Shown here one piece after another: positions 15,885 through 61,200 of a stretch of DNA of 64,000 bases. The first letter of the stretch is position 1. The number at the start of each line of letters is the position of its first letter. Made by a program: the position numbers and the translations under genes. Below the pieces are notes generated by a model. That model saw nothing but the letters and a program-made list of their open reading frames with translations, was not told the origin of the DNA and ran no database searches. The stretch lies in the IMG/VR virus record IMGVR_UViG_3300050821_009835, positions 124,001-188,000 of that record; one strand, written 5' to 3'.

Positions 15885-15969
15885 AAATTCATTGAGACCT
15901 ACCCGGCATCCGTCGTTCGCTAACGCACGTTCCGGCACCCTTACGAGCGGCTTGACCCGGTCTCAAATT

Positions 15970-16055
15970 TGGTGCATCCGAGAGGAATCGAACCTCCACC
16001 CCATTGCTGGGACTGGCACCTCAAGCCAGCGCGGCTTCCTTTACGCCACGGGTGC
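15970..16055 (-). tRNA. tRNA-Leu(GAG)
   Basis: Class II cloverleaf; loop TTGAGGT; CCA. Confidence 0.88.
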
Positions 16056-16066
16056 AAACTTAAGTT

Positions 16067-16146
16067 TGGTGCGCAAGGTGGGCTTCGAACCCACAAATCC
16101 GCTGATTCTGAATCAACGAGGTATTCCAAATTCCCGTCACTTGCGC
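16067..16146 (-). tRNA. tRNA-Leu(CAG) lacking the long variable arm
   Basis: Loop TTCAGAA; Leu-like D loop; variable region only ~6 nt; CCA. Confidence 0.8.
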
Positions 16147-16159
16147 GAACATCTAAATC

Positions 16160-16249
16160 TGGTGGCGCATATAGGATTCGAACCTATTCAGGCCGCTAGG
16201 GCCACGAGTTTTACAGACTCGCGAGACTCTCCCACTTCCCCGATACGCC
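16160..16249 (-). tRNA. tRNA-Tyr(GTA)
   Basis: Class II cloverleaf; loop CTGTAAA; CCA. Confidence 0.88.
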
Positions 16250-35356: not shown

Positions 35357-35624
35357 TAGGAATTCGAGGTTCAAATTCGAGTGTGTCCAAATTAAGCTGC
35401 CAAACAGCAACATCAATGGCTAAGTCTTTCACCAATCCAGAAATCCAGTCTCGAAAACTCGCATCTGCTGTTCGCGCATGCGTTGTAGCATTCTGAAATT
35501 GAATTTGAGAATTGAGTTGTTGCCACTGTAGTTCCCGAGTTTTATATTTTTGAAAAACATCGAGAGTGGGTTTTACAGGTGGAGAAGACTTTGGAGACGC
35601 CGATTCTATTACTTCCGTTGCCAT
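35346..35624 (-). CDS. Hypothetical protein
   Basis: 92 aa; preceded by the AGTATTGA motif. Confidence 0.5.
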   Translation of the reverse strand: MATEVIESASPKSSPPVKPTLDVFQKYKTRELQWQQLNSQIQFQNATTHARTADASFRDWISGLVKDLAIDVAVWQLNLDTLEFEPRIPNAS

Positions 35625-35659
35625 AACGTTTCAATACTTGATTGCATAACGTTTCAATA

Positions 35660-36331
35660 TCAATTTGCCAAACCTACTATTTGCCAAGTAGTGGATCCAT
35701 CAGACTCTAAAACTACACACTGACCCTGGTTGGTTAAAACATAGGAAGTCATGGAGAAAGCCGCCCCTATAAATTGCCCGGCTACGGGGTTCAAGGAAGC
35801 ACCCCCTCCTGTGGTTGCTGTCAAAATCGCTTTGATGGTCTGGCCTTGGTATAAAGTAGCATCAGGTAGCTGAATTGGTGCATTCCCAGAAGCGCCGACT
35901 GAAATTTTCACTAAAGTCTTAAAGTTGGTTCCTCCAGCAGCCACAGTACCTCCAGAAGCCGTGAAAGTCTGTACGCTATCCCCCATATTTGCCCAAGCAG
36001 CAGCTGTAGAACTCGTGGCCACAAGTACCTGCCCTGAACTTGGCGGGGTGCTGCTAATTTGTACCCCGTAAATCTTATTGGCATTGATGATACCCGAACC
36101 AGAGAATGTTAAATTGGCCCCACTGCCCACTACCATTAAAGCACTGGTATTAGTACCACTAAGGAGATTCTCAAATCCAGCGGCGGCTCCCGCCGAAAAG
36201 AAACTTGGATCCAAAGTTCCATCGCTGTTTGTCACAATAGGAACACCTGGAGCGGCAGGGCTTGTAGCTGCACCCTCAACAAGATCATAGAAGAAGGTTT
36301 GCTGGTTAAGAATTAGAAGAATTGTGGCCAT
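35660..36331 (-). CDS. Probable virion/fibre protein
   Basis: Gly/Ser/Thr-rich; PSSGQVLVATSSTAAAW fibre-like motif. Confidence 0.55.
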   Translation of the reverse strand: MATILLILNQQTFFYDLVEGAATSPAAPGVPIVTNSDGTLDPSFFSAGAAAGFENLLSGTNTSALMVVGSGANLTFSGSGIINANKIYGVQISSTPPSSGQVLVATSSTAAAWANMGDSVQTFTASGGTVAAGGTNFKTLVKISVGASGNAPIQLPDATLYQGQTIKAILTATTGGGASLNPVAGQFIGAAFSMTSYVLTNQGQCVVLESDGSTTWQIVGLAN

Positions 36332-36365: not shown

Positions 36366-38777
36366 TCAGTTGATTGTTCCATTGTTTAGTATAGCATTGT
36401 TGATAGTAACCACAGGACTCCCACCCGAGGATACCCCAGTTCCAGTCAATGGCAGCAAATCCGGAGAGGATGCTGCGTTCGAAGCTACGTTCACGTTCGC
36501 CGAGTAAGAAATTGCGCTGGTCGGCGTAAACGTAACCACAATATTACAGGACGCACTGGCAGCCAGTGTTGAACTGCAAGTTCCCGCACCCGTCAGCGTG
36601 TAAGCCGCCGCCCCGGTACCCGTCAGCGAGATGACGATACTGCTCAGCGTCGCCGTTCCGGTATTCGTAAGAACTATCGTCTGCGGACTGCTAGTGGTAG
36701 TTACCGCTTGATTGCCGAAGGCCAGGCTAGATGGGCTATAACTAGTTGCTGGAGCTGGTGCCGTACCCTGAAATGGGTGAGGATAAGTAAATCCACTGCC
36801 CCAAGTGGGGGAACATGTATTCGGGAAAAAGTCCGTCCCAGAAATTAAGTACGGGGCGTCCGCCGCGTTCGGTACATTGATGATCGAACCAGTCAACCCG
36901 GAAATTGTATTGTTACATGCATAGATAGGAGCGGATACCTGACCCGGCCCATATCCCGGTTGATCCCTGAACGGCTTCGTGCCGTTCGTATTATCTACAT
37001 ATCGAGTACAGGTGCCCCCGCTCACGCATTGAGTCTCGTTATCGGTGGACAGAAACTTTTGCGGGCTAGATGTAGCCACCACGCCTCCTGCGTTCGCCCA
37101 GGCGCTCCCGTTGTCAATTGTAAGATCAACGAAGCACGTGCCGAAAAGTGTTCCCGCTCCCAATCCCGCCCCAGCAGTGAATTGAAAACTTGTAGCGTTG
37201 CTGGCCGTCACCGACCAAAGACCGTTGTAACCACTCGGCGTAATATCCATGCAAGCTACATTGTTTGTTCCCGTGCCAGGATTCAGCGTACTAGTGATCG
37301 TGACGGTTGTCGAAGACTCGCTCGCTGCCGTCACCGGGATTGGGGTAGAAATCGTCTGGTTGAAGGGGTTGGGACGGCTTCCTCCACTCGTAAACGCTTT
37401 AACGGCCTTGTAATTATAGGTTCCGGAATTGTTAGAGGTGGGACCGATTACTGCGTCCGCTGCGTAGGCATTGCTGGCTTGCCAGTCGGAAGCACCAAGA
37501 GTATTTTGAACTCCGTCAATTCCATTCACTTCCCAATTAAGATCAGGTCCTCCCGTGCCTAGTCTAGCAGCGTCAGTGGGTTGGTCTACTCGATAGATCG
37601 CTAATGGGCAAGGACTCCAGCCTCCACCACCGCTATTAAGGAACGTGTTATTCTCTAAAATCCCCGTACCACTACGCCAGTTGCACAGGATGATCGAACT
37701 GGCACTAGGATTGTCCCAAGTAAGGCTATACAGTTCTAATCCGATTGTGCCTCGCGTTTCGCCGCTGTCGTACCCGTGCCCACCCGCAATGAAAGAACCG
37801 ATACCATATGAGTAGCGTAAAGCGAGACTGCCCCCTGTATAAAAATCAGCGACTCCTTCAGTCCCGTTCGTGGCGAAGTAAAAGAAACTGTCTTCGACGT
37901 ACTGTTCATTCTCCGTACCCACGGGATTAGGAAGCAGCCAATTAGAGAATCCATCCGTACCGAAGTCTCCGTAAATTTCAAATGGTGCCGTAGGCGGCCC
38001 TGCCGACGAGTCCTGGTACAGAAGGTGATCACTCAAGCCATTCATGTCCAAAATTGCAAACAGTCGAGGATCGGCGTTCGGAGACTTGATGTGGATATGA
38101 TCGATACGGTAACCGAGAGTTCCTACGGCTCCTACAAGTTGAAGGAGGCCGTTTGAGTACGCAGAATTAGGAGTTAGCGTCATTCCAGTCAGCCGTACAA
38201 ATGCCGTATTGGCTGCTCCTGTGATGTTCAATGTTTGCACACCACTTGCGGCCAATGTCAAATTGGTATTGTCCGTAACGATCATCGGGACTACATAGTT
38301 AGCCCCTGAGAGAGTGGGCACAGTACCCGTAGTGATAAGCGTGGTAGGAGAACTGACTGAAGAAATTGTATAGGGTTTGCCAGCTACGTAAACGGTGCCC
38401 GTCCAGCCCGTATTGAACATCGTACCAGAGACATAAGTAACGGTCGTTCCACTGCTATTCACAGTGCCAGAGCCAGAAATACCCCCGGAACTTGCACCGC
38501 AACCGAATTGACAGGTGTTTGCTCCTTCAATAGTGAGCGCAGGATTGTTTGTACCTGTAAAGGCGGGACAGCCCGTTGGGGGACTTGCGGTAATCCCAGT
38601 ACCTAAAGAAGTAGCCGAACAGCTAGGAATCTTGACTATCGTATTGCATGCGGAAACTGAGTTCAACGCCGTCTGTATATCCGAAGCTGAACACGAATTC
38701 GCGTTAATAATCGTCTGCGCACTCGCCCCAAGGACAAGCAAGAGCAGCAAGATAGCAGCGAGGAAAATTTTCTTCAT
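36366..38777 (-). CDS. Secreted beta-rich protein with C-terminal ASH/Hydin-type Ig (choice-of-anchor D) domain
   Basis: Signal peptide MKKIFLAAILLLLLVLGASA/Q; SPSSLAFGNQAV...LTNTG...SC.I.VTFTP. Confidence 0.7.
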   Translation of the reverse strand: MKKIFLAAILLLLLVLGASAQTIINANSCSASDIQTALNSVSACNTIVKIPSCSATSLGTGITASPPTGCPAFTGTNNPALTIEGANTCQFGCGASSGGISGSGTVNSSGTTVTYVSGTMFNTGWTGTVYVAGKPYTISSVSSPTTLITTGTVPTLSGANYVVPMIVTDNTNLTLAASGVQTLNITGAANTAFVRLTGMTLTPNSAYSNGLLQLVGAVGTLGYRIDHIHIKSPNADPRLFAILDMNGLSDHLLYQDSSAGPPTAPFEIYGDFGTDGFSNWLLPNPVGTENEQYVEDSFFYFATNGTEGVADFYTGGSLALRYSYGIGSFIAGGHGYDSGETRGTIGLELYSLTWDNPSASSIILCNWRSGTGILENNTFLNSGGGGWSPCPLAIYRVDQPTDAARLGTGGPDLNWEVNGIDGVQNTLGASDWQASNAYAADAVIGPTSNNSGTYNYKAVKAFTSGGSRPNPFNQTISTPIPVTAASESSTTVTITSTLNPGTGTNNVACMDITPSGYNGLWSVTASNATSFQFTAGAGLGAGTLFGTCFVDLTIDNGSAWANAGGVVATSSPQKFLSTDNETQCVSGGTCTRYVDNTNGTKPFRDQPGYGPGQVSAPIYACNNTISGLTGSIINVPNAADAPYLISGTDFFPNTCSPTWGSGFTYPHPFQGTAPAPATSYSPSSLAFGNQAVTTTSSPQTIVLTNTGTATLSSIVISLTGTGAAAYTLTGAGTCSSTLAASASCNIVVTFTPTSAISYSANVNVASNAASSPDLLPLTGTGVSSGGSPVVTINNAILNNGTIN

Positions 38778-39148
38778 TCACAACTCCAGGTGAACGTATC
38801 GTGGCACTCGACCGTCAAACCGTGAGATGTGCCTAAATCTTGACTCGGTTTAATGTCAAACGCTCCGCCGTCCGAACAAGATTGTTTTCCATCCCGTACC
38901 ATCGGGTGGCTATCGTGTCGCTGAATAAACCCACACCCATTTGACGCTTTAAAGTAGATTGAACTTCTGATTCCCACAACAGAACGAGGAGTGGCTGCTG
39001 TACGGCACTCTGAAATAGTCAATTCATTACCGTGGCGGGCATAGCAAGTGCGCTCGCTGAGCACGGTTTCTCCCTCAGCAATTCCCGCTACTTTGTTCTG
39101 GGCTGCCGCCGCGAGACAAAAGAGAAGAACGCACAAGAAACGCTTCAT
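38774..39148 (-). CDS. Secreted Cys-rich protein
   Basis: Signal peptide MKRFLCVLLFCLAAAA/Q; ATGA overlap. Confidence 0.55.
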   Translation of the reverse strand: MKRFLCVLLFCLAAAAQNKVAGIAEGETVLSERTCYARHGNELTISECRTAATPRSVVGIRSSIYFKASNGCGFIQRHDSHPMVRDGKQSCSDGGAFDIKPSQDLGTSHGLTVECHDTFTWSCE

Positions 39149-39825
39149 TGCACCGACCCCGCTGACCAAGTATTAAGCTGATTGACAGTCGAACCTGACC
39201 CAGAATCAACATCAATTCCAGGGTTTCCTGTAGTGTAAGTTGTGTCCGTTGCAGTCGGCGAAAGAGCCACACCATTCACTTTTAAAGTCAATACACTCCC
39301 CTTAATTTGCAGATTAACGATATCACCGAGTGCTGGCGTTTGAGAATAGGTTTGGAGAGTCGTAAACCCACCTGGTTGATCTGATCTCTGAATATAATAA
39401 GTGGTTGAACTTATGTGTGTTTCCGCCCCTCCACAATATCCCGTTAAATGACCACTGCTTCCAGCTGCGCGAACACATACCATAGTTGTATTAGAACCTG
39501 AAATCGTGCCGAGCGTTGCCTGAGCAAACTGATTATTAGTCCAGGTAAATCCTGTCCGATCATCACAAGAAGCAAACCCAGCAACACCACCATTTGGCGT
39601 AGAGATTTTACCATCGTTACAGGCGCTACTATAAGGCGAATTCTCCCAATTAGCATTGTAAGTATGCAGATTCGTTGCAGCCGTACCACTGAACGTATCC
39701 GTATCGAGTATCGTTTGACCACCAGCCGGAGGCTGAGGTTCAAGAAGCCCAGGCATTACCCCCTGGGCATAAGCAGAAATCGAAAGAATAATAATTAGAA
39801 ATAGGCGGGTTAGTTGTTTGTCCAT
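39145..39825 (-). CDS. Secreted beta-sandwich protein (start revised to MDKQL)
   Basis: Signal peptide ..FLIIILSISAYA/Q. Confidence 0.6.
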   Translation of the reverse strand: MDKQLTRLFLIIILSISAYAQGVMPGLLEPQPPAGGQTILDTDTFSGTAATNLHTYNANWENSPYSSACNDGKISTPNGGVAGFASCDDRTGFTWTNNQFAQATLGTISGSNTTMVCVRAAGSSGHLTGYCGGAETHISSTTYYIQRSDQPGGFTTLQTYSQTPALGDIVNLQIKGSVLTLKVNGVALSPTATDTTYTTGNPGIDVDSGSGSTVNQLNTWSAGSVQ

Positions 39826-41471
39826 GCTGTCGTCGCTCCTGCTCCAATGGCTTCCCAAGTGGTGGAATCTGTATCTTGTACGCAGAGGAAATCCCCTGCA
39901 CTTCCAGGTGATACCAAGCCAGTGGCTGAACCCGCAGTACCCGCTATCCCCTTGTAGTACATCGTCACACCCGTGGTAGGAACAAACGAAACAGCGTGAG
40001 CTACAGTGTGGTAATTCCCCACACAAATCGCCGCACCAGAACCCGTAGGCACAGGTAAATCAACGACATAAGCTCCAGAGGTGTTGTTATAAATAACCTG
40101 ATTCTGAAGAGTAGCACTAAACGGCGACCCAGTAGTCTTCACGAATTTACAACCTAATCCCGTGTATGCTGTGGTTGCTATGGTGGCAGAATTATCACAA
40201 GCTGACGGAGCGGCATTTGGGGCTTTAAACAGCGTAGACCCATTCACCTGAAAATCTGCAATGTCTACGCTCGTCCCCGAGGGGTTATTGAAGATTGCAC
40301 CCACCGTAGACGTGCTCCCGGAAGTCGCAGTCACCTGAGTAAACGCGCCAGTGCTCGGAGTCGTTCCGCCGATAGCTCCAGGACTAGGGAAGGATGACGT
40401 AGACGCACCCAGCGCGACGGAAGTCCCAGCAATGTTGATTGTTGAGTTCGCTAAAGCGGCATTTGGCACTGAACCAAAACTAGGATCAGCACCAGTATTG
40501 CCAAGGAGCACTGTGTTTGTCGTTCCCACAGCCGTACCTCCAAGCTGTGTTGTGGTGCCCTCATTTAATGTAACACCATGAGCAGTGCTAACGCTATTAA
40601 CATTAACAGAACCACCCAGTGAAGTGGATTGTCCTTGCACAGTAATGGAAGAATTAGAAAGAGCCGCATTCGCGACTGTTCCGAAACTTGGATCTGCCCC
40701 CGTATTTCCAAGCAAAACGGTATTATTTGTACCGACTGCCGTTCCTCCCAATTGAGTTGCCGCTCCTTCATTCAAAGCGACACCATGAGCAGTCGTCACG
40801 CTGTTGATGTTGACCGATCCACCCAGTGAAGTAGACTGCCCTTGAACTGTTATCGAGGAGTTAGTTAAAGAGCCATTACCAATATTCGTAAGTGTGTTGC
40901 TCGCCCCACTGATCGTCTTATTCGTTAATGTCTGAATGTCCGACGTACCAACTACTGTTCCCGCAGGTGCCGCTACGCTCCCTACTACACCCGTTGCCGT
41001 GGTTACTGTAACCAATCCAGTAGAAAGTGCTCCTGGTAGCAAGAATCCCGCAGCAGAATGTAAGTCCAAAATGCCACTCCCTCCTGCTGTGATCGTGTGA
41101 CCAGAAAAAGTAAAATCACCCACGCAGCCAAAGACTCCGGCATTATCATACTGAAGAGATGATCCTGTCGTCGTGCAAGGTGTCCCGCTGACGGATACCC
41201 AGGAGGGTACGCCAGTGCTAGTCTCTTGGAGGACTCTAGTTCCCGAAGTGTTTCCAGGCAAAAGCGCCCAAAAAGTGCATTGTCCGGATGAAAAAGTTGC
41301 GCAATAAACCAAGTCCCCCGATTCCAATGCCGGGGGGAACAGATTTATACGGTCCTGTGCCGCTGTTTGCCCCCCAGTACCACCCTGAGGAATGCGAAGA
41401 ACAGTTTGCGCAAATGCAGAGAGTGAGAGCATTAATACTAAAGCGGCGAGGAATTTTGTGACGTTGCGCAT
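39810..41471 (-). CDS. Tail-fibre-like repeat protein with signal peptide
   Basis: MRNVTKFLAALVLMLSLSAFA/Q; LRIPQGGTG, QTLTNKTISGASNTLTNI, duplicated ~69-aa unit. Confidence 0.65.
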   Translation of the reverse strand: MRNVTKFLAALVLMLSLSAFAQTVLRIPQGGTGGQTAAQDRINLFPPALESGDLVYCATFSSGQCTFWALLPGNTSGTRVLQETSTGVPSWVSVSGTPCTTTGSSLQYDNAGVFGCVGDFTFSGHTITAGGSGILDLHSAAGFLLPGALSTGLVTVTTATGVVGSVAAPAGTVVGTSDIQTLTNKTISGASNTLTNIGNGSLTNSSITVQGQSTSLGGSVNINSVTTAHGVALNEGAATQLGGTAVGTNNTVLLGNTGADPSFGTVANAALSNSSITVQGQSTSLGGSVNVNSVSTAHGVTLNEGTTTQLGGTAVGTTNTVLLGNTGADPSFGSVPNAALANSTINIAGTSVALGASTSSFPSPGAIGGTTPSTGAFTQVTATSGSTSTVGAIFNNPSGTSVDIADFQVNGSTLFKAPNAAPSACDNSATIATTAYTGLGCKFVKTTGSPFSATLQNQVIYNNTSGAYVVDLPVPTGSGAAICVGNYHTVAHAVSFVPTTGVTMYYKGIAGTAGSATGLVSPGSAGDFLCVQDTDSTTWEAIGAGATTAWTNN

Positions 41472-41482: not shown

Positions 41483-41932
41483 TTAAAATCTGTACCAGGC
41501 GGCTAGATCAGATCCCAGTACAGGAGCAGTAAAAATGGCGATGGTAGAACCTGAAAGAGTAAAATCAATTCCTGAACTCAACACTTGCCCATTCTCAACA
41601 AGAATTAGGCTGGCGGCGGGGTTCGGAATATGGGCTAGAGTAAAAGTTGCATTAAAGCCATCAATAACACCTGCCGGGGTTTCCGCATCAGAAAAATTTG
41701 GAACATTTCCGCCAGACTGTCCACTATTGGAAATGAAGCCTAAAGAAATATTTGATCCGGATATGGCTGAAACTGCAAGCAAATCCCCAACATTGTATGG
41801 AGCGGCATTTGGCAACTGAATGAAGAGGTCACCGCCCAATGGTTGTGCGCCAATAGCCACCTGACCCACTAAAGAACCTGTGGCGATAAAATACCCATTA
41901 ATCAGTTGATATTGTGGCGTTTGCCAGCTCAT
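41483..41932 (-). CDS. Probable virion structural protein
   Basis: ETPAGVIDGFNATFTLAHIP..NGQVL..GIDFTLSGSTI motif. Confidence 0.6.
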   Translation of the reverse strand: MSWQTPQYQLINGYFIATGSLVGQVAIGAQPLGGDLFIQLPNAAPYNVGDLLAVSAISGSNISLGFISNSGQSGGNVPNFSDAETPAGVIDGFNATFTLAHIPNPAASLILVENGQVLSSGIDFTLSGSTIAIFTAPVLGSDLAAWYRF

Positions 41933-45141: not shown

Positions 45142-45215
45142 TGGCGGCTATACCGGGGCTCGAACCCGGTTCTGCTGATTGAGAATCAACAATCCTACCC
45201 ATAGACGATATAGCC
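45142..45215 (-). tRNA. tRNA-Glu(CTC)
   Basis: Cloverleaf; loop TTCTCAA; G73; CCA. Confidence 0.85.
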
Positions 45216-45219
45216 GAGA

Positions 45220-45295
45220 TGGTGGCATACAGGGGAGTCGAACCCCTCATCATCTGGGTGAAGGCCAGAGGACCAAACCGATAGTCGGGTATGCC
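45220..45295 (-). tRNA. tRNA-Glu(TTC), C33 variant
   Basis: Loop CCTTCAC; CCA. Confidence 0.75.
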
Positions 45296-45329
45296 AAAAC
45301 TAACTTGTTTGTGAGCTAACAGTACAAAC

Positions 45330-45405
45330 TGGTGGAGACGGCGAGATTCGAACTCGCGGCCTCATCGTTGCGAACGATGCGCTCTCCCAACTGAGCTACA
45401 TCCCC
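45330..45405 (-). tRNA. tRNA-Ala(CGC)
   Basis: G3:U70; loop TTCGCAA; CCA. Confidence 0.92.
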
Positions 45406-45412
45406 CAAATTT

Positions 45413-45486
45413 TGGTGCTCCGTAAGCGAATCGAACGCTTGCTTTCTGCATGTCGAACAGACGCTCTACCACTGAGCTAACAGAGC
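45413..45486 (-). tRNA. tRNA-Val(GAC), C33 variant
   Basis: Loop TCGACAT; CCA. Confidence 0.85.
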
Positions 45487-45488
45487 TT

Positions 45489-45959
45489 TTACTTCGTAAC
45501 CGGGACTACCTGAGAAGGGATCACCACTTCTGTCCCTGGTACAGTCGATCCGCCTGTTTGGGGTGGAGTCGCTGTAGTAATGGTCGTACTCGTTGTCCCC
45601 GTACTGGTGGAGGGTGCTGGACTCGGAGCATCCGGGCTCATTGTCTTCAATAATGCGCCAAATGCTGAACCAAATGCACCTGTATCAAACGTCAAACCAT
45701 TCAGAGCAATCCCGTTATCCGAAGCAATTGTCCCGTTTTGGATCAACTGCACCACCGTGTAGTACATGTGCTCGGCACGATAAAAAAAGAATACAGAAGC
45801 GACTGCTAGAATTATGATGTTCCCGCCACGAGAATTCGTAATCGTAGCAAAATCCTGCCACACTCCTACGGAGGGGAGCTTCCCCTGATACCACATTACC
45901 ATGAAGGAGAGATATACTACAATCACTCCCGCCCACATTTCCCAAGTTATCGTCACCAT
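45489..45959 (-). CDS. Multi-pass membrane protein with Thr/Pro tail (holin-like?)
   Basis: Three hydrophobic segments; GAGG RBS. Confidence 0.55.
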   Translation of the reverse strand: MVTITWEMWAGVIVVYLSFMVMWYQGKLPSVGVWQDFATITNSRGGNIIILAVASVFFFYRAEHMYYTVVQLIQNGTIASDNGIALNGLTFDTGAFGSAFGALLKTMSPDAPSPAPSTSTGTTSTTITTATPPQTGGSTVPGTEVVIPSQVVPVTK

Positions 45960-45993
45960 TTCGCACCTCTACTATCGAGGCTCGAAAGTCAAA

Positions 45994-46800
45994 TCAATCG
46001 TAGAGTCTCCAAAGTTTTTCTACTGGCAACCCAGTTACCGAAGCCACTTCTGAAAACGTGGGCTGCAATTCTTTTTCAAAAAGAAATTGTACTTGAGGAC
46101 ATTGCTGCTGCTTAGCACTCGTTCTTGCAGAAGGCCAGCCCTTGATTTCTACCAAATTTCCATCTACTAAAAAATCCGGGTAGAAATTGTATCGCACTCC
46201 CTCAAACTCGTAAGATAATGGCCGCCAATTTCTTTCTACTTTCTTTCCTAGCTGCAACGAATGAATGAGATAGGCACATTCCCAGGTGGACTGTACAAAC
46301 ATACCATGGTAGTATCCTGATTTACTACGGCCTCCACCTTCCCGTATTCCACCGCAGCGACCTTCAGCCTTTGCTTTGGCTAAACCTTCTTCATTGTGCA
46401 ATTTTCTACACGAAAGACAAACTGTCCAATTCCTAGGTATTTCTTGCCCACAAGCACAACGTTTAGGAGGCTTAGGAGGTAATAAAGAAACCCTATCATG
46501 GTGAGCCTGAGATATCCTTCTGCGAGTTGTTAACAAACACGGTCTTGTATTCGAACAAGACACAGAACAAGTTAACCCCTTACGTCTAGAAAATTGTTTT
46601 GGGGTGCATTCCAACAAAAACTGCTTTCCACAAACAACGCACTGAACCGGGTAAAGAACCTTTCGTTTGTTTTTCTTTGCCACTGCCAAATTCAAGGCTA
46701 CTCTGTCTGGACGTTTGAAGCAATTACGTATGTGCGCTCCCCAACTTCGCCCATCCTTAGGAAATCCTTCCCTACTTAGTCCACAGTACTGACAAGTCAT
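45994..46800 (-). CDS. TnsA-like PD-(D/E)XK homing endonuclease
   Basis: QSTWE, FYPDFLVDGNLVEIKGW; N-terminal zinc modules. Confidence 0.75.
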   Translation of the reverse strand: MTCQYCGLSREGFPKDGRSWGAHIRNCFKRPDRVALNLAVAKKNKRKVLYPVQCVVCGKQFLLECTPKQFSRRKGLTCSVSCSNTRPCLLTTRRRISQAHHDRVSLLPPKPPKRCACGQEIPRNWTVCLSCRKLHNEEGLAKAKAEGRCGGIREGGGRSKSGYYHGMFVQSTWECAYLIHSLQLGKKVERNWRPLSYEFEGVRYNFYPDFLVDGNLVEIKGWPSARTSAKQQQCPQVQFLFEKELQPTFSEVASVTGLPVEKLWRLYD

Positions 46801-46863
46801 TGGTTTACAACCTCTATAATCAACTCAGATAGTTGTAAATCAAGACTCAACAGTCGCTTATTT

Positions 46864-46942
46864 TGGAGCGGAAGATCAGATTTGAACTGACGAAATGCTG
46901 CGTTGGAAGCGCAGTGCCTTAACCAGACTTGGCGACTCCCGC
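46864..46942 (-). tRNA. tRNA-Gly(TCC)
   Basis: Loop CTTCCAA; U73; CCA. Confidence 0.9.
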
Positions 46943-46951
46943 AAAACATTC

Positions 46952-47325
46952 GCGCTGAACCTATAGCCAGGATTTTGTCGTGGACGACCATTCCTCTAGG
47001 CCACCCGTTACCGTGTGGCTCAAGCTCTCTACCCGCTGATTCCCCACTTCTTACGAAGTGAACGGGCCGGATCAGCCCTGCTCAGCCTATTTGAGATTGC
47101 TCCACGTGGAGATTGCCCGTTTCACCCTATGCTATGGCTGCGAGCCCCTCCCGCATTTAATCCCCAGTCGAGGGAACCAAGTCACAGACTCGTCTCTGTT
47201 GCTCTAATCGTCATTACGCCTTTCAGCGTAACGCTAGGGAGTTACCCTACACGCCATCCTGTGGAGTCCTGAACTTCCTCGGTAAGCAATTCCATCCTGC
47301 TTAACGCGATCGTCCAGTTCAACGC
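46952..47325 (-). ncRNA. rnpB: RNase P RNA, A-type-like, lacking P13/P14
   Basis: GAGGAAGTTCAGG (CR-I), ACAGAGAC (CR-II), GGGTGAAAC (CR-III), CTCCACGTGGAGCAA, AGAGGAAT (CR-IV), ACAAAATCCTGGCTA (CR-V); P1 GCGTTGAACT/GGTTCAGCGC. Confidence 0.92.
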
Positions 47326-47363
47326 AAATTTCAAAGATCTAAACCAAAGTTGCCTGAGCAACT

Positions 47364-47600
47364 TTAATTTTGGTGGAGAACACGGGATTCGAACCCGTCT
47401 GTATTCCGCATTGCAAGTGCAGCGGCCACTCCCAGCAGTCCCGATCCCCCTAACCCCCTTAATCGTTCAATCTCATTGGCAGCTTCTTCAAGTAAATCAG
47501 CCAATCTATCAGGCTTCCCTTCTTGCACGCTCTTCCGTGTAGAAATCTGACGTCTTATCTCAGCTCGCTTGCGTAATCTCTCAATGAGATCTTCGTTCAT
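47364..47600 (-). CDS. Conserved-type phage hypothetical protein whose frame runs through a tRNA-Ala
   Basis: ERLRKRAEIRRQI..RKSVQEGKPDR.ADLLEEAA.EIE motif. Confidence 0.55.
   Translation of the reverse strand: MNEDLIERLRKRAEIRRQISTRKSVQEGKPDRLADLLEEAANEIERLRGLGGSGLLGVAAALAMRNTDGFESRVLHQN
47371..47449 (-). tRNA. Atypical tRNA-Ala(TGC)
   Basis: G3:U70; loop CTTGCAA; CCA; weak D arm; G8. Confidence 0.7.
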
Positions 47601-47604
47601 AAAT

Positions 47605-47680
47605 TGGTGGAGCTAGTCGGGTTTGAACCGACGGCCTCTTTCATGCCATGAAAGCGATCTCCCAACTGATCTATAGCCCC
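47605..47680 (-). tRNA. tRNA-Ala(GGC)
   Basis: GGGGCTA 5' end, G3:U70; loop ATGGCAT; CCA. Confidence 0.9.
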
Positions 47681-47683
47681 AAA

Positions 47684-47854
47684 CTCGAGGGGTCTCGGGG
47701 ATTTCACGAAACGTTCCAGCCGTCGCTGTCTATCCCAGACCCTGAAAGCCCTAACGTGCACCTACTGGGACTCTGCTCTGCCGCTGAGCTACACCCCTGT
47801 CGGGATGGTTGGATTCGAACCAACGACCTGAGTCCGATCGATGCACAGGCTTTC
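47684..47854 (-). ncRNA. Circularly permuted tRNA-like (YrlA/Y-RNA-like) RNA, copy 1, with 3' extension
   Basis: Order: long stem, T arm (GTTGG TTCGAAT CCAAC), loop-closed acceptor stem, D arm (GCTC AGCGGCA GAGC), long stem. Confidence 0.75.
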
Positions 47855-47858
47855 GAAA

Positions 47859-47937
47859 TGGAGATGAAGGCAGGATTTGAACCTGCGATTACAGAGGTTG
47901 CAGCTCTGCCCCTTTAGCCAGACTTGGGTACTTCATC
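47859..47937 (-). tRNA. tRNA-Cys(GCA)
   Basis: Loop CTGCAAC; U73; CCA. Confidence 0.9.
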
Positions 47938-48579
47938 ATAAAGTCGTACGAAATCTTGTCCGTACTTGCCAGAAACATGATCCAAAATACCCTGCATCTG
48001 TTCCCACATTAGAAGATGAATCTTCCTGCTTCCAACGGCATCCAGTTTTCTCTACAAGATATCCTTGTCCACTACAAAACCCTTAATCTCTACTAAACTC
48101 CCATCCGCCAACTTGAAATCCGGTGTGTAGAAATGAACCACTTCATTACGGTCTAAGTAACCGAATCTTTCCCGATTTCTTTCAAAAGGAACACCGTGTT
48201 CCAATTGATAAATTACCCAAGCAAGTTCCCAAGAAGAGTCGCACCAAATTCCTTGATATCGGCCTTTAATGCCTCGCCCACCTCCCTGGTTGCCCAATCC
48301 TAATCGCTTCCTAGTATCACCAATCTTTTTCTTAGTTTCTTCGGACGGCGGTCCTGCTTTACTCCCGGTTCTAGCCCTTGCTGCTGCTTCTACTAAAGCC
48401 CGAACCTTTTCGTTTTCTATAGTCAACCCCTTATTCCAAGGTATCGTGCGTTCAGCTGGCTTAAAACTTACTCCTTTGCCATGCATCCTCCAAATGTGAC
48501 TTGTTAAGCCAAATAAGGACATTTCTTTCCGGCAAATAAAACAGCAAACAAAACCACCCTTAGAGCCTGTTGTTGGCAT
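47914..48579 (-). CDS. TnsA-like PD-(D/E)XK homing endonuclease with an in-frame TAG at 48052-48054
   Basis: CDSSWE..YTPDF..LVEIKGF; frame continues 46 codons past the TAG (..YGQDFVRLYDE) to a TAA inside tRNA-Cys. Confidence 0.75.
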
Positions 48580-48613
48580 AACTCCCTCTAAATAAGAGTA
48601 GGAAGTTTAAAAC

Positions 48614-48646
48614 CAGCTCTGTGCCTTACCACTTGGCCAACGGTCC
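48614..48646 (-). pseudogene. Orphan 5' half of a tRNA (Cys-like), truncated at the anticodon
   Basis: GGACCGTTGGCCAAGTGGTAAGGCACAGAGCTG followed directly by the endonuclease leader. Confidence 0.65.
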
Positions 48647-48659
48647 ATCTAAACTTTTT

Positions 48660-48734
48660 TGGCGGTGACGACGAGAGTCGAACTCGCATCCTACTCCGTG
48701 ACAGGGAGGCACTCTACCATTAAGCTACGTCACC
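48660..48734 (-). tRNA. tRNA-Asp(GTC)
   Basis: Loop CTGTCAC; G73; CCA. Confidence 0.9.
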
Positions 48735-48744
48735 GCATAAAACT

Positions 48745-48818
48745 TGGAGCGGGATAGGGTAATCGAAACCCTTTCTCCGGTCTGGCAGACCAGGGCACAC
48801 CCAATGTACCAATCCCGC
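48745..48818 (-). tRNA. tRNA-Gly(GCC)
   Basis: Loop CTGCCAG; U73; CCA. Confidence 0.88.
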
Positions 48819-48874
48819 TTTAAACGATGCGAATCTATACGCTCAAGACGTTCGTCGCGCCTAAATCTAAATTT

Positions 48875-48951
48875 TGGTACAGGGTGAGGGACTCGAACCC
48901 CCGACATTCTCCTTGTAAGGAAGACGCTTCTACCAACTGAGCTAACCCTGT
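48875..48951 (-). tRNA. tRNA-Val(TAC)
   Basis: Loop CTTACAA; CCA. Confidence 0.9.
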
Positions 48952-49177
48952 ACATTCTATCGTAAAATAGAAAAGACGCCATTAACAGGCGTCCTCGTTT
49001 TACGATTCGGATGTCTTGTTTTACTCTCCGAATCCCTCCGAGGACACTTGCCCCTCCGCCGCGACGCAGCATTCAGCTGCAGTACCGCTATCTCGCACGA
49101 AAGTGTTATTGGTCGTCATGTTATAATAATACCTAGGTATTTGGAAAATCGGGTATAACTAGTGAAATAAAAACTAA

Positions 49178-49203
49178 AGGCCCGAATCTTCTTCTTCGGG
49201 CCT
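49178..49203 (-). terminator. Intrinsic terminator
   Basis: AGGCCCGAA/TTCGGGCCT hairpin followed by TTAGTTTTTATTT. Confidence 0.7.
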
Positions 49204-49239
49204 TCTACTGCCGATGCCGTCGATCGTTACAGGACAACA

Positions 49240-49275
49240 TTAAAAGTTGAAAGGAACCATGATGGTTTTTCGCAT
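49240..49275 (-). CDS. 11-aa small ORF (MRKTIMVPFNF)
   Basis: Strong AAGGAGG RBS; sits between the large ncRNA and the terminator. Confidence 0.4.
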   Translation of the reverse strand: MRKTIMVPFNF

Positions 49276-49715
49276 AGTTATTGTCCTCCTTTTCTTAAAT
49301 TGCACAAAATTCGATCCCCAGCGAGGCCTATGGTATCCCCGCTTCTTTAAAGAGAGCCAACACCCTCCTCCGTTATTGTAGTCCTCCGGTGTTGGCCTTG
49401 GGCGGAGATCTCTGCCCCGTCGTCGACCGGGTTGGCTCCCTCCGCCTCAATTCACTCGGGTGCATCCTACTTCCAGCGGCAATTTGGTTCCGTTTTAGAC
49501 CTAAAGACTTCTTAGGAATCCAGTTTCGGCAGCACCCGCGCTTTTGCGTTTACATCGTACGCTGTGGACGTGTACCTGACCCGCTCCGACCCGAACGTGG
49601 CCGAACGATCGTTGGCAAACGGCGGCTAACGCTTCCCACAGCTAAACTTAATCCAGGAACGCCCTCCTGCGCTCAACAAGGCAGTTATGCACTATACACC
49701 GTGTTCCCGAACCCT

Positions 49716-49791
49716 TGGTGGAGGATGCAGGGATCGAACCTGCGACCTATTGCTTGCAAAGCAATCGCTCTCCCAACTGAGCTAATCCCCC
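49716..49791 (-). tRNA. tRNA-Ala(TGC)
   Basis: Canonical; G3:U70; loop TTTGCAA; CCA. Confidence 0.93.
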
Positions 49792-58196: not shown

Positions 58197-59312
58197 ATGC
58201 TATATACCATGAATGACAGCATTTTCAGAATACAGTCCATCGACCGTAATTTGATCCATTGGGAAGACCATCTTCTGGATCTCAGTCCTTGCGAAAAAAT
58301 TGGTGGCATGTGGTTTAAACGAGAGGATTTCTTTGCCCCTTTAGGATTTGGTGGTATCAATGGCAGCAAACTCCGTGTTTGCATTTGGCTAATTAACGAA
58401 GCACTCAAGCAAGGGGCCAAGGGGGTTTCGCATGGTGCTGTGATAGGTTCCCCTCAACATCCCATGGTAGCTTGTATTGCTGCTCATTACAATGTTCCAG
58501 TGATTGATTGTATTGGTACTAAGAAACCACTTGAACACGAAACTTTAGCGACGGCTGCATGGATGGGGGCAGAATTCCGTTCGTTTAATCCGGGCTTTGC
58601 AGCTACATTAAACAGCAAGGCCGAACAGATTGCAAAAGAACTTAGATATTTCCATTTAGAAACTAACATCACTGTAGATCAGGAGAAGAATCCTGCGGCT
58701 CGGGTGGAAGCATTTCACAAGGTCGGCAGTGTGCAGGTCCAAAATATTCCTGATCACATTGAGAACATCATCGTGCCAGCGGGTAGTTGCAACAGTGTGA
58801 CCTCTGTCTTATACGGGATTGCCCAATATCGCCCCAAGAATCTCCAGAATGTTATCCTCATGGGCATTGGTTCTTGCGGTAGTTCTGATCCGACTTACAT
58901 CCATCGTCGTCTGCAAATTATCGAAGGAGTAAGTGGAGTAAACTCTCAGGACATGTTTGGTTGGTTCCTGAACTACAAACACAACAATCCTAGCCAAAGC
59001 GCGGCCACTTGGCCTCGTAAATTCTCACCTATCTACACATTAACCCATTATGATGTAAATGGGGGCTGTGGACAGTGTAAGAAGTGCGAAGGAGGGTATT
59101 GCACCTACAACGATCTGATGCCCTATCGATTTAATGATCTGGATTTTCACCCGAGGTATGAGGGTAAGATGATGTGTTTCATGGGAGATCATCTATCCGA
59201 ATTCCAACAGTATCTCAATGACAAGACACTCTTCTGGATTGTTGGATCTAAGCCATCTGCGGCAGCGATGGCTCCGGTATTGAAGGAGAAATTTGGGGAT
59301 TTTTATGAGTGA
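58197..59312 (+). CDS. PLP-dependent enzyme (fold type II, ACC-deaminase-like) of the DNA hypermodification cassette
   Basis: WFKRED..GGINGSKLR PLP lysine, GSPQ, VPAGSCNS, FHPRYEGK, LFWIVG. Confidence 0.8.
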   Translation: MLYTMNDSIFRIQSIDRNLIHWEDHLLDLSPCEKIGGMWFKREDFFAPLGFGGINGSKLRVCIWLINEALKQGAKGVSHGAVIGSPQHPMVACIAAHYNVPVIDCIGTKKPLEHETLATAAWMGAEFRSFNPGFAATLNSKAEQIAKELRYFHLETNITVDQEKNPAARVEAFHKVGSVQVQNIPDHIENIIVPAGSCNSVTSVLYGIAQYRPKNLQNVILMGIGSCGSSDPTYIHRRLQIIEGVSGVNSQDMFGWFLNYKHNNPSQSAATWPRKFSPIYTLTHYDVNGGCGQCKKCEGGYCTYNDLMPYRFNDLDFHPRYEGKMMCFMGDHLSEFQQYLNDKTLFWIVGSKPSAAAMAPVLKEKFGDFYE

Positions 59313-60525
59313 TCTTTTCTACAGCCCGTTCGATCAAGAAGTCATAGGGCTTGACAAAATACTCGTGTGTTCAGCAGATCATACGACTCCAGGCCGCTAT
59401 TGTGAACTTTTGGGCTTGTTTGAACAACAGGATCTTAAAGAGGGCATGGATTTTCGCAAGCCGGAATTCCGAAGGGAAGTATTTCTACGTTTCTACGAGT
59501 TCTGCCTGAAGTATCGGCTGCACGCCGGGGCTAGTCTACCCTACATGACGTTCCCGTTCTTGAGCAAAGAAATTGGTTGGGGGCGGGAGGAGTTGCTGTG
59601 GTTCGTTTTCATCAACGGGAACACTCAACATCCGTTGACTTCTTGGGTTATTTTCAATCAGTTCCCTGACTTTGCTAATCTAGATATCCCGGCTCTGGAT
59701 GCTTGGTACAACAAGGAATGGCCTCGTCTTGAATTTGACACAGATCGTCGACACCAGAAACGCGATTTTATCAAATCGGTTACTCGCTATAAGGAACTCT
59801 GTGGATGTAGAGATCAAGCGTGGCTTTTTCACAACCAAATAGTAAGCGACGACCCACTTGAGAATTTTCAAGTTGTATGGGATATGGTGCGTAAGGATTT
59901 CTATTCTTTTGGTCGTATGAGTACGTTTTCTTATCTTGAGTACCTGCGTATCGCTCGGCTGAACATTGAGCCGAACTCTTTGTTTCTAGAAGACATATCC
60001 GGGAGTAAATCGCTTCGTAATGGTTTGGCAAAAGTATTGGGCCGGGATGACCTCGATTGGGGTGGCCCGGATAACCCTACAGGGTTCGAAGGAAAGTATA
60101 CTCCTCAGATGATGGATTGGTTGAAAAAAGAAGGTGCCATCCTTCTTGAGGAAGCTAAGAAAAGATTCAAAGGCCGGGATTTCGCTCAGGATGTGACTTA
60201 TTTTACGCTGGAATCGGAGTTCTGTACTTACAAGGGCTGGCATCGCTTAAATCGGCGTTACCCTGGAGTTTATGCTGATATTTTTCATGGAAGAATTAAG
60301 AAAGCCGAGGCCCGTTGGCCCGAAGAGGATTTTTCGGTCTTTTGGAAGATGCGTCAGCAAATGTTGCCTCAGTATTTGCGTCTTGAGGATAGTCCTGGGG
60401 ATCCTGGTTTAAAGCCTGAGAAACAAAATCACTACCGAGAAACTGGGCAGGTTATCATGATGTTGGACTGGTCCTGTTTTAAGAATGATTTTAACGATAG
60501 AATTTTGAGTATTGAAGCAACATGA
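59293..60525 (+). CDS. Amino acid:DNA transferase (aGPT-pyrophosphorylase clade 2-like)
   Basis: W..F..GNTQ, FDTDRR, FGRMSTFSYLE, SGSKS.RNGL, FTLES..C.YK, RRYPG.Y.D; flanked by a PLP enzyme and a kinase. Confidence 0.75.
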   Translation: MGIFMSDLFYSPFDQEVIGLDKILVCSADHTTPGRYCELLGLFEQQDLKEGMDFRKPEFRREVFLRFYEFCLKYRLHAGASLPYMTFPFLSKEIGWGREELLWFVFINGNTQHPLTSWVIFNQFPDFANLDIPALDAWYNKEWPRLEFDTDRRHQKRDFIKSVTRYKELCGCRDQAWLFHNQIVSDDPLENFQVVWDMVRKDFYSFGRMSTFSYLEYLRIARLNIEPNSLFLEDISGSKSLRNGLAKVLGRDDLDWGGPDNPTGFEGKYTPQMMDWLKKEGAILLEEAKKRFKGRDFAQDVTYFTLESEFCTYKGWHRLNRRYPGVYADIFHGRIKKAEARWPEEDFSVFWKMRQQMLPQYLRLEDSPGDPGLKPEKQNHYRETGQVIMMLDWSCFKNDFNDRILSIEAT

Positions 60526-61169: not shown

Positions 61170-61200
61170 CAGTAAATTAGAACTTTTAAACAGGAGAAAC

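What the first reader, a model, noticed from the sequence alone, without database searches (positions are those of the whole stretch)
36366..41471. Four consecutive fibre/adhesin-like genes all carry Sec signal peptides ending A/Q
Seen: N-termini MKKIFLAAILLLLLVLGASA-Q, MKRFLCVLLFCLAAAA-Q, MDKQLTRLFLIIILSISAYA-Q and MRNVTKFLAALVLMLSLSAFA-Q. The last has clear tail-fibre-type motifs and the first an ASH/Hydin Ig domain. Established: tail fibres normally assemble in the cytoplasm without signal peptides; Gln at +1 can be cyclised to pyroglutamate. Inference: an exported module that remodels the infected cell surface or is added to virions outside the cytoplasm.
Basis: partly seen in the sequence, partly recalled or inferred. 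Interest (0 to 1): 0.6.

Follow-up and report, generated by a model that had tools for sequence, protein, structure and literature searches.

The report
Phage operon of exported fibre-like proteins
A giant soil phage carries four back-to-back genes (a tail-fibre look-alike, a sugar-binding lectin, a small cysteine-rich protein and a large enzyme-like protein) that all have classic export signals, so they most likely work on the infected cell's sugar coat and not as parts of the virus particle.

Summary
Four overlapping minus-strand genes (A 553 aa, B 226 aa, C 124 aa, D 803 aa) each start with a canonical Sec/signal-peptidase-I leader ending AxA|Q. Independent JGI gene calls give the same starts. 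The window lies in a jumbo soil phage assembled as 265 kb and 340 kb.

The A|Q ending is the "Q-rule" of signal-peptidase-I substrates, so it reflects the host. Nine of about eleven leaders in this phage obey it.

Export is supported independently:
- The mature proteins have even cysteine counts (8, 4, 6, 16). The leaderless fibre-like proteins of the same phage have 0-2.
- B's and D's families, and relatives of A's N-terminus, almost always carry leaders.
- D ends in a choice-of-anchor D domain.

What the proteins are:
- A has tail-fibre repeats but lacks the N-terminal virion-attachment domain.
- B folds as a ConA-like lectin/glucanase.
- D belongs to a large uncharacterised family. In Acidobacteriota genomes its members sit in exopolysaccharide/O-antigen gene clusters.

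The order fibre, then B, then D-like or beta-helix gene recurs in other contigs. Some roughly 60-kb phage contigs carry up to six consecutive leader-bearing genes.

Best reading: an exported module that binds and probably cuts host surface polysaccharide. Nothing supports addition to virions. The host is probably Acidobacteriota, unproven.

The parts
39810..41471 (-). Gene A, 553 aa: exported tail-fibre-like protein. The leader is residues 1-21 (41409-41471). A Cys-containing N-terminal region follows. Residues about 120-360 (40392-41114) are fibre repeats, including two near-identical 69-aa repeats at about 201-338. The C-terminal domain has no detected relatives.
   Evidence: ORF and sequence. 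phrog_6002 virion structural protein, E 1.8e-12. 232 fibre-like relatives in IMG/VR; none of the best 80 has a leader. Of 14 relatives of the N-terminal 175 residues, 12 carry leaders and 11 have Q at +1. 8 Cys in the mature protein.
39145..39825 (-). Gene B, 226 aa: exported ConA-like lectin/glucanase beta-sandwich. The leader is residues 1-20 (39766-39825).
   Evidence: AlphaFold model with pLDDT 75.5 and pTM 0.75. Foldseek PDB matches: CBM66, mycobacteriophage Douge baseplate/central fibre, galectins, GH16, PL7. BFVD matches: tail fibre and minor tail proteins. A family of 10 relatives, mostly with leaders. B-like genes always lie after a fibre-like gene.
38774..39148 (-). Gene C, 124 aa: small exported orphan with 6 Cys in a 108-aa mature part. 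The leader is residues 1-16 (39101-39148).
   Evidence: ORF. No Pfam, PHROG, NCBIfam or PDB match. No usable Atlas relatives; the Atlas model has pLDDT 0.48. Absent from the syntenic module in L090.
36366..38777 (-). Gene D, 803 aa: exported protein with a leader (residues 1-20, 38718-38777), a core of an uncharacterised family that is probably a beta-helix glycanase (residues 21-676, 36750-38717), and a choice-of-anchor D Ig-like domain (residues 672-770, 36468-36764).
   Evidence: NF012200 at 63.9 bits, above its cut-off. The core profile finds 3373 proteins, nearly all with leaders. Relatives lie in EPS/O-antigen clusters. Full-length relative in L090, E 5e-61. Beta-helix neighbours in the Atlas are a lead only. 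16 Cys in the mature protein.
41483..41932 (-). Gene U, 149 aa, no leader, no Cys. It is a paralogue of the Ig-like repeats of a virion structural/tail-fibre protein at genome 32033-33022. It forms the upstream border of the island.
   Evidence: blastp 52-57% identity, E 1e-22. PHROG hits of the paralogue: virion structural and tail fibre.
35660..36331 (-). Gene E, 223 aa, no leader, 1 Cys. It is fibre-like and a weak paralogue of the virion structural protein at genome 30697-32040. It forms the downstream border of the island.
   Evidence: blastp 33% identity over 91 aa, E 1e-6. The paralogue hits phrog_1645, virion structural.

Best explanation
A-D are a translationally coupled operon of a jumbo soil phage. 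Its products are sent across the host inner membrane by the host Sec system and cut by host signal peptidase I, which exposes Gln.

Outside the cytoplasm they act on the host's surface or exopolysaccharide:
- D is a phage copy of a secreted protein that bacteria encode inside EPS/O-antigen gene clusters. It probably cuts or trims the polymer.
- B is a lectin-type binder or glucanase.
- A is a fibre-shaped binder built from tail-fibre repeats but lacking the virion anchor.
- C is an accessory protein of unknown role.

The likely benefit is removal or remodelling of the polysaccharide layer around the infected cell. That would ease release and spread of progeny, and would destroy or mask receptors.

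Shown: the leaders, the operon structure, the folds and families, the recurrence of the gene order in other contigs, and the genomic contexts.
Inferred: actual export, cleavage and pyroglutamate formation, the enzymatic activity of D, the polysaccharide target, and the benefit to the phage.
For: - Canonical leaders and overlapping genes, with the same starts in JGI's gene calls.
- Even Cys counts (8, 4, 6, 16) in the mature proteins, against 0-2 Cys in the leaderless fibre-like proteins of the same phage.
- A lacks the N-terminal attachment domain present in all 80 canonical relatives examined.
- B has a ConA-like lectin/glucanase fold.
- The D core family has 3373 members and nearly all top members carry leaders.
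- Bacterial D-family genes lie beside GT2, Wzy_C, SIS, Asn-synthase and GDP-sugar genes.
- D's mature N-terminus closely matches Acidobacteriaceae members that also follow A|Q.
- D carries a choice-of-anchor D domain.
- The order fibre, B, then D-like or beta-helix gene recurs in L090, L094 and L095.
- The phage also carries many glycan-synthesis genes.
- Identical small contigs of the module occur in a soil metatranscriptome.
- Q-rule literature: PMC5837995, PMC10653852. Q-rule leader genes have been noted in P. gingivalis phages (PMC10367356).
Against: - No SignalP run and no experiment.
- D's fold is unverified. The model failed (pLDDT 35.7), there is no Pfam or PDB match, and the Atlas neighbours score below 0.9.
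- No catalytic residues are assigned.
- In roughly 60-kb phage contigs, runs of leader-bearing genes occupy the place where tail fibres normally lie, and I saw no other fibre genes in the 22 kb inspected. That keeps a virion role open.
- The RNA-library signal could be DNA carry-over.
- The host is not identified.
Confidence: 0.55

Rival explanations
1. Receptor masking or superinfection exclusion. The exported fibre-like and lectin-like proteins bind the phage's own receptor from the periplasm or the cell surface. That would block further phage adsorption and stop progeny being lost on debris, as small leader-bearing proteins encoded next to receptor-binding genes do in T5 (Llp) and phi80/N15 (Cor). 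No polysaccharide cleavage would be needed.
For: - The module sits between U and E, paralogues of two adjacent virion fibre genes.
- B-like genes always follow a fibre gene.
- A and B have receptor-binding-type architectures.
- The Llp/Cor comparison is from my own knowledge and was not tested here.
Against: - D's relatives lie in EPS clusters, and its family has many invariant Asp/Glu/His/Arg residues. Both point to an enzyme.
- A's C-terminal domain shows no similarity to any other protein of this phage.
- Known exclusion proteins are small, not 550-800 aa.
Confidence: 0.15
2. A, B and D are true virion fibres or spikes. Either the leader has another role (for example temporary membrane tethering), or the exported proteins join particles at or after lysis.
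For: - A's central repeats are homologous to virion fibres.
- B's fold is common at the tips of tail fibres.
- In L125/L127 six consecutive leader-bearing genes lie between leaderless genes that I take to be internal-virion genes and the lysis cassette. In L123 several leader-bearing genes lie beside pectate-lyase-like genes.
Against: - A has no N-terminal attachment domain.
- The AxA|Q sites look cleavable.
- Even Cys counts contrast with near-zero Cys in the leaderless fibre proteins.
- D's family is chiefly a bacterial secreted family.
- This phage has a separate leaderless fibre cluster.
- Tailed phages assemble in the cytoplasm (established knowledge).
Confidence: 0.12
3. The module is a recently captured block of host surface-protein genes (a moron). 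It would benefit the host or have no role in lytic infection, for example in adhesion or biofilm formation.
For: D's closest genomic relatives are bacterial, from Acidobacteriota. The choice-of-anchor D domain is a bacterial surface-protein domain.
Against: - The gene order recurs in several unrelated phage-like contigs.
- A is built from phage fibre repeats.
- B-like and A-like proteins were found close to the query only on phage-like or short metagenome contigs. Sampled Acidobacteriota genomes gave only weak B matches.
- The module's GC content (0.49-0.51) is close to the rest of the phage.
Confidence: 0.1
4. The leaders are chance hydrophobic N-termini or wrong start codons, and the proteins are cytoplasmic.
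For: Only a home-made predictor was used. A relaxed version of it misplaces cleavage sites.
Against: - Four of four have n-, h- and c-regions with AxA|Q.
- JGI's gene calls give the same starts.
- Homologues from other contigs keep the leader.
Confidence: 0.03

Closest known systems
Q-rule signal-peptidase-I substrates (Bochtler et al. 2018, PMC5837995; Szczesniak et al. 2023, PMC10653852)
   Same: The leader ends in a small residue followed by Gln at +1. That Gln is expected to be cyclised to pyroglutamate, which stabilises extracytoplasmic proteins. All four genes obey the rule, as do about nine of eleven leaders in the phage.
   Different: The rule was described for Bacteroidota. Here the best host candidate is Acidobacteriota. 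Many Acidobacteriaceae D-family members also follow A|Q, and one sampled genome shows it in about half of its leader-like N-termini (a crude measure). No pyroglutamate was shown. The phage record encodes no glutaminyl cyclase.
Leader-bearing Q-rule genes of unknown function in Porphyromonas gingivalis phages (PMC10367356)
   Same: These are phage genes adapted to the host's Sec/SPI pathway with Gln at +1. The authors proposed that they modify the host envelope.
   Different: Those are scattered genes of unknown fold in temperate phages of roughly 30-50 kb. Here the genes form a four-gene coupled operon with assignable folds (fibre, lectin, Ig plus enzyme-like core) in a jumbo soil phage, and the gene order recurs in other phage-like contigs.
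Phage tail fibres and tailspike depolymerases
   Same: A shares fibre repeats with hundreds of phage fibres. B's fold occurs in tail-fibre tips. Beta-helix (L095) or D-like (L090) genes follow in the syntenic loci.
   Different: Canonical fibres have an N-terminal virion-attachment domain and no leader. A, B and D have leaders, paired cysteines and no anchor.
Secreted glycanases encoded inside bacterial exopolysaccharide operons (for example PslG, PelA, AlgL, BcsZ; named from my own knowledge)
   Same: Bacterial D-family genes are leader-bearing and lie among GT2, Wzy_C and sugar-nucleotide genes.
   Different: There is no sequence or proven fold relationship to those enzymes, and no activity is shown. 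The D core is an uncharacterised family absent from Pfam and PDB.
Leader-bearing genes embedded in tail-fibre regions: T5 Llp, phi80/N15 Cor, lambda Lom and Bor (from my own knowledge)
   Same: Exported proteins are encoded next to receptor-binding genes, and they act on the infected or lysogenic cell's envelope.
   Different: Those are single small lipoproteins or outer-membrane proteins. Here there are four large soluble-type SPI substrates with fibre, lectin and enzyme-like architectures. No homology exists.

Membership tests
Sec / signal peptidase I substrate | Positively charged n-region, uncharged hydrophobic h-region of about 10-14 residues, small residues at -3 and -1, and no lipobox Cys at +1 | tested here: met
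   All four leaders fit: A ends A-F-A|Q, B A-Y-A|Q, C A-A-A|Q, D A-S-A|Q. The rule-based scan scores them among the best in the genome.
Sec / signal peptidase I substrate | Positive call by a trained predictor (SignalP) or experimental cleavage | not testable with these tools
   No SignalP and no proteomics were available.
Q-rule substrates | Gln at +1 after the cleavage site in most SPI substrates of the organism | tested here: met
   Four of four in the module. About nine of eleven plausible leaders in the 265-kb record.
Q-rule substrates | The host belongs to a Q-rule lineage and has a glutaminyl cyclase; the N-terminus is pyroglutamate | tested here: inconclusive
   The host is unknown. 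Acidobacteriaceae D-family members follow A|Q. A crude scan gives about half for one Acidobacteriota genome and few for another. Cyclase presence did not track this. The phage has no cyclase.
Phage tail fibre | Fibre shaft repeats homologous to known fibres | tested here: met
   phrog_6002, E 1.8e-12. 232 relatives in IMG/VR, 35-88% identity over residues about 120-360.
Phage tail fibre | N-terminal domain that attaches the fibre to the virion, and no export signal | tested here: not met
   None of the 80 best relatives has a leader, and most begin with a conserved leaderless N-terminal domain. A begins with a leader followed by an unrelated Cys-containing region.
Phage tail fibre | Trimeric assembly and presence in particles | not tested
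Concanavalin A-like lectin/glucanase fold (B) | Beta-sandwich jelly roll matching solved lectins, CBMs or glucanases | tested here: met
   Model pLDDT 75.5. Foldseek probability 1.00 to CBM66 (E 7.6e-6), galectins, GH16 and PL7, and to phage tail proteins.
Concanavalin A-like lectin/glucanase fold (B) | Sugar binding or cleavage | not testable with these tools
   This needs biochemistry.
Choice-of-anchor D domain proteins (D C-terminus) | Match to NF012200 above the curated cut-off | tested here: met
   63.9 bits against a cut-off of 45, residues 672-770. 69.3 bits in the genome search.
Right-handed beta-helix polysaccharide lyase/hydrolase (D core) | Match to beta-helix families, or a confident beta-helix model | tested here: inconclusive
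   No Pfam or PDB hit, even with a 35-sequence profile. The model failed. hhalign to two beta-helix-type neighbours matches only the N-terminal cap. The Atlas feature neighbours are beta-helix clusters but score 0.78-0.84.
Type IX secretion cargo | C-terminal sorting domain | tested here: not met
   The NCBIfam scan of A-D at E<=0.1 returned only NF012200.

The most novel reading that the evidence does not exclude
A broad, undescribed group of soil phages, probably infecting Acidobacteriota, routes a whole set of tail-fibre-, lectin- and spike-like proteins through the host Sec pathway, in runs of up to six consecutive genes. In that case receptor-binding-type proteins would work as free extracellular or periplasmic agents, or would be loaded onto particles after export. 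The Q-rule would then extend beyond Bacteroidota to Acidobacteriota and their phages.
Probability: 0.2. Interest if true: 0.8.

Novelty: new variant of a known kind. Interest (0 to 1): 0.6.

Why it matters
Phage fibres and depolymerases are thought of as parts of the particle, or as soluble by-products released at lysis. An operon that actively exports fibre-like, lectin-like and EPS-cluster-type proteins before lysis would be a different way for a phage to handle the thick polysaccharide layers of soil bacteria.

The finding also has practical uses:
- The leader's +1 residue gives a sequence-only clue to the host.
- It points to a large uncharacterised family (more than 3000 members) of probable polysaccharide-active secreted proteins.
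- It shows that the Q-rule may apply outside Bacteroidota.

All of these can be tested with standard expression, fractionation and proteomics.

Tried and rejected
- Structure of D. The model from a 3-sequence alignment failed (pLDDT 35.7). Both prediction jobs were then spent, so the deeper alignment A5 could not be folded and A was not modelled as a trimer.
- A-B binding. Complex prediction on the A C-terminal domain with mature B gave no verdict. This is not evidence either way.
- Scans that found nothing:
  - blastn of the module against GenBank phages.
  - IMG/VR scans with D, with the neighbouring helicase and with the B family.
  - The first GTDB scan with D plus P0003.
  - A 35-sequence alignment was too diverse to seed a scan.
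- PDB sequence searches for A-D and the D profile gave nothing significant. Pfam on 35 D-family members gave nothing shared.
- hhalign of the D profile against two neighbouring beta-helix-type proteins matched only the leader and N-terminal cap.
- No close relatives of D or B appeared in samples of 301 and 401 Acidobacteriota species genomes (5 and 6 weak hits). One of the weak hits is in G025, an unpublished genome.
- No T9SS sorting domain. No phage glutaminyl cyclase or signal peptidase.
- Promoter and terminator scans were at shuffle level. TRF did not pick up A's repeats at the DNA level.
- A relaxed leader heuristic misplaced cleavage sites, so its +1 statistics were discarded.
- Rejected idea: that Gln at +1 proves a Bacteroidota host. 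Shine-Dalgarno-like motifs precede 44% of the phage's genes, and D's relatives are Acidobacteriota-dominated with no Bacteroidota among the 79 listed.

Full report
**Where the window lies.** The window is bases 124001-188000 of a 264,912-bp IMG/VR virus record (linear, CheckV completeness 78%). The same phage also occurs on a 340,335-bp contig. The window holds 24 tRNA genes. It also holds replication and nucleotide-metabolism genes: a helicase, a RecA-like protein, a ribonucleotide reductase, a DnaB-like protein and an amino-acid:DNA transferase. GC content is about 0.46. This is a jumbo phage. Public runs that hold the stretch are soil metagenomes.

**The observation.** Four consecutive minus-strand genes are present exactly as described:
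- A, 39810-41471, 553 aa.
- B, 39145-39825, 226 aa.
- C, 38774-39148, 124 aa.
- D, 36366-38777, 803 aa.

They overlap by 16, 4 and 4 nt, so they are probably translationally coupled. JGI's own gene calls on this contig give the same four lengths. Each protein begins with a net-positive n-region, an uncharged hydrophobic stretch of about 10-14 residues and an AxA motif followed by Gln. This is the canonical Sec/signal-peptidase-I pattern and not a lipoprotein box. My rule-based scan finds only about 10-12 such N-termini among the ORFs of the 265-kb record. Four in a row is therefore a real cluster. SignalP was not available.

**Why A|Q.** Gln at +1 is the published Q-rule. In Bacteroidota most signal-peptidase-I substrates expose Gln, which is cyclised to pyroglutamate and stabilises extracytoplasmic proteins (PMC5837995; PMC10653852). 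Outside that phylum the frequency varies widely. Leader-bearing Q-rule genes have already been noted in P. gingivalis phages (PMC10367356). In this phage, read by eye, about nine of eleven plausible leaders end in A|Q. The feature is therefore genome-wide and reflects the host's export machinery. The record encodes no glutaminyl cyclase and no signal peptidase of its own.

**Independent support for export.**
- The mature proteins have 8, 4, 6 and 16 cysteines, all even numbers. The leaderless fibre-like proteins of the same phage (U, E and the cluster at genome 26.5-33 kb) have 0-2. This fits disulfide formation outside the cytoplasm.
- B's and D's families, and relatives of A's N-terminus, are leader-bearing elsewhere too.
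- D ends in a choice-of-anchor D domain (NF012200, 63.9 bits against a cut-off of 45). This domain is typical of bacterial surface proteins. The ASH/HYDIN Pfam hits to the same stretch are below threshold.

**Protein A.** Residues about 120-360 match phrog_6002 and 232 fibre-like ORFs in IMG/VR. They include two nearly identical 69-aa repeats. None of the 80 best relatives has a leader; most begin with a conserved N-terminal domain that I take to be the virion-attachment part. A has a leader and an unrelated Cys-containing region instead. When the first 175 residues are used as the query, 12 of the 14 relatives found carry leaders, and 11 of them have Gln at +1. They lie on phage contigs of about 52-66 kb.

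**Protein B.** With an 11-sequence alignment the model is usable (pLDDT 75.5, pTM 0.75). It is a concanavalin-A-like beta-sandwich. The best solved matches are CBM66, the baseplate/central-fibre protein of mycobacteriophage Douge, galectins, GH16 glucanases and PL7 lyases. Among viral models it matches tail fibre and minor tail proteins. Its ten relatives are all about 210-236 aa and most have leaders.

**Protein C.** It is a small orphan with six cysteines. No relatives were found. It is absent from the syntenic locus L090.

**Protein D.**
- The core (residues 21-676) has no Pfam or PDB match.
- A profile of D plus two relatives finds 3373 proteins at E<=0.001, 221 of them at E<=1e-30. Nearly all top members start with a leader.
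- A 35-sequence alignment shows invariant Asp, Glu, His and Arg residues: D250, E295, D311, R321, H334, D337, R342, R368, R396, R604 and D605. This suggests an active site.
- Among GTDB species genomes the relatives are dominated by Acidobacteriota MAGs, with some Verrucomicrobiota and Binatota. No Bacteroidota appear among the 79 listed.
- Many Acidobacteriaceae members have the same A|Q junction and almost the same mature N-terminus as phage D.
- In those genomes, and on the contig of the closest metagenomic relative P0003, the gene lies among GT2 glycosyltransferases, a Wzy_C-family membrane protein, SIS, asparagine synthase and GDP-sugar enzymes.
- Exopolysaccharide operons commonly include a secreted glycanase (my own knowledge). 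I therefore read the D core as a polysaccharide-active enzyme, probably a right-handed beta-helix.
- The fold is not shown. My model failed because I folded it before the deep alignment was available. The Atlas neighbours are beta-helix clusters but score below 0.9. hhalign against two neighbouring beta-helix-type proteins matched only the N-terminal cap.

**The module recurs.**
- L090 (7.2 kb) has, in order, a 731-aa fibre-like gene with a leader and Gln at +1, a B-like gene with a leader, and a full-length D relative with a leader and the choice-of-anchor D domain (E 5e-61).
- L094 and L095 have a fibre-like gene, then a B-like gene, then a leader-bearing protein. In L095 that protein is a Pfam Beta_helix protein (63 bits).
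- L091 has a tail fibre whose C-terminus looks to me like a chaperone domain, then a B-like gene with a leader, then small membrane proteins.
- In the 58.5-kb contig L125/L127, six consecutive genes (677, 278, 1120, 155, 573 and 486 aa) have leaders, four of them with Gln at +1. They lie directly upstream of a lysis cassette. The genes before them have no leaders.
- L123, L128 and L129 show similar runs that include D-like or pectate-lyase-like genes.

**Setting inside this phage.** The module is flanked by U (41483-41932) and E (35660-36331). Both lack leaders and both are paralogues of two adjacent virion structural genes at genome 30.7-33.0 kb. The phage therefore has a separate, leaderless fibre cluster, and the exported genes sit inside a partial second copy of it. 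Next to that cluster, and also in the window, the phage carries many glycan genes: two GT2, two GT6, GDP-mannose dehydratase, epimerases, a C-methyltransferase and a sulfotransferase-glycosyltransferase fusion. This fits a phage that invests in host surface polysaccharide.

**Host.** The host is not settled. Several observations point to Acidobacteriota (Terriglobia-like):
- The sample is soil.
- D's relatives are Acidobacteriota-dominated, with matching leader and mature N-terminus.
- Shine-Dalgarno-like motifs precede 44% of genes against a 13% background. That is unusual for Bacteroidota (my own knowledge).
- In my crude scan one Acidobacteriota genome has A|Q in about half of its leader-like N-termini.

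Several observations argue against:
- The phage GC (0.46) is lower than that of those genomes (0.53-0.60).
- Close relatives of B and D were not found in samples of 301 and 401 Acidobacteriota species genomes.
- Another sampled genome shows few A|Q sites.

Bacteroidota remains possible.

**Expression.** A soil metatranscriptome run holds 14 small contigs identical to parts of A, B, the C/D junction, the 3' part of D, and E. This is compatible with transcription in the field, but DNA in the RNA library cannot be excluded.

**Verdict.** The leaders and the Gln are explained by host Sec/SPI export under the Q-rule. The proteins are best read as an exported, polysaccharide-directed module built from tail-fibre-type parts and a host-type EPS-cluster protein. 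I put this at 0.55. The narrower receptor-masking reading gets 0.15, a true virion role 0.12, and passive host-derived cargo 0.10. Addition to virions outside the cytoplasm has no support here. The runs of leader-bearing genes at the tail-fibre position of smaller phages keep that question open, and they are the most interesting lead.

Noticed in passing
window 8442-16249 and 45142-49791: 24 tRNA genes lie in two arrays on the minus strand, including four tRNA-Pro, four tRNA-Leu and four tRNA-Ala. A large tRNA set could offset a codon-usage gap between a GC 0.46 phage and a higher-GC host.
   Followed up: no
window 59293-60525 (+): A 410-aa protein matches amino acid:DNA transferase (PF18724, 68 bits). 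This suggests hypermodified DNA bases in this phage.
   Followed up: no
window 5208-6719 (-): A 503-aa fusion of a glycosyltransferase-like N-terminus with a sulfotransferase domain (PF17784, 108 bits). A phage-encoded sulfotransferase is unusual and may modify glycans.
   Followed up: no
G000:C1:11107-26569 (outside the window; L084, L085): A glycan-synthesis island lies directly beside the leaderless fibre cluster. It contains two GT2, two GT6, GDP-mannose 4,6-dehydratase, two to three epimerases/reductases and a C-methyltransferase.
   Followed up: partly
G000:C1:226-5115, 5284-5700, 65613-66092, 209745-211316, 237650-238462; window 61048-62451: Six further leader-bearing genes. Five end A|Q, including a 1629-aa protein with 34 Cys at the contig start. 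The one in the window starts at an internal Met and ends AFA|T. None has an informative Pfam or PHROG hit.
   Followed up: partly
L125/L127 (58,519-bp Logan contig) and L123 (62,955 bp): In roughly 60-kb phage contigs, up to six consecutive large genes at the tail-fibre position have Sec-type leaders with Gln at +1, just upstream of a holin-like / lysozyme / lipoprotein lysis cassette. I found no description of this in the paper library.
   Followed up: partly
whole G000 record: AGGAG/GGAGG-type motifs lie 5-20 nt upstream of 44% of the predicted starts, against 13% at random positions. This bears on the host phylum.
   Followed up: partly
G160, G260, G001 (Acidobacteriota genomes): Presence of a type I glutaminyl cyclase (PF05096) did not track my crude A|Q frequency. 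G160 has a clear cyclase but few A|Q sites. G260 has many A|Q sites but only a marginal match. G001 has none. This is unexplained. A type II cyclase was not searched for.
   Followed up: partly
window 35622-35665: A 23-bp unit repeated twice (86% match) lies just downstream of gene E, at the 3' edge of the island.
   Followed up: no
L090:2-1480 (-): A GroEL-like chaperonin gene lies immediately upstream of the syntenic exported module in a 7.2-kb contig. It may be phage-encoded.
   Followed up: no
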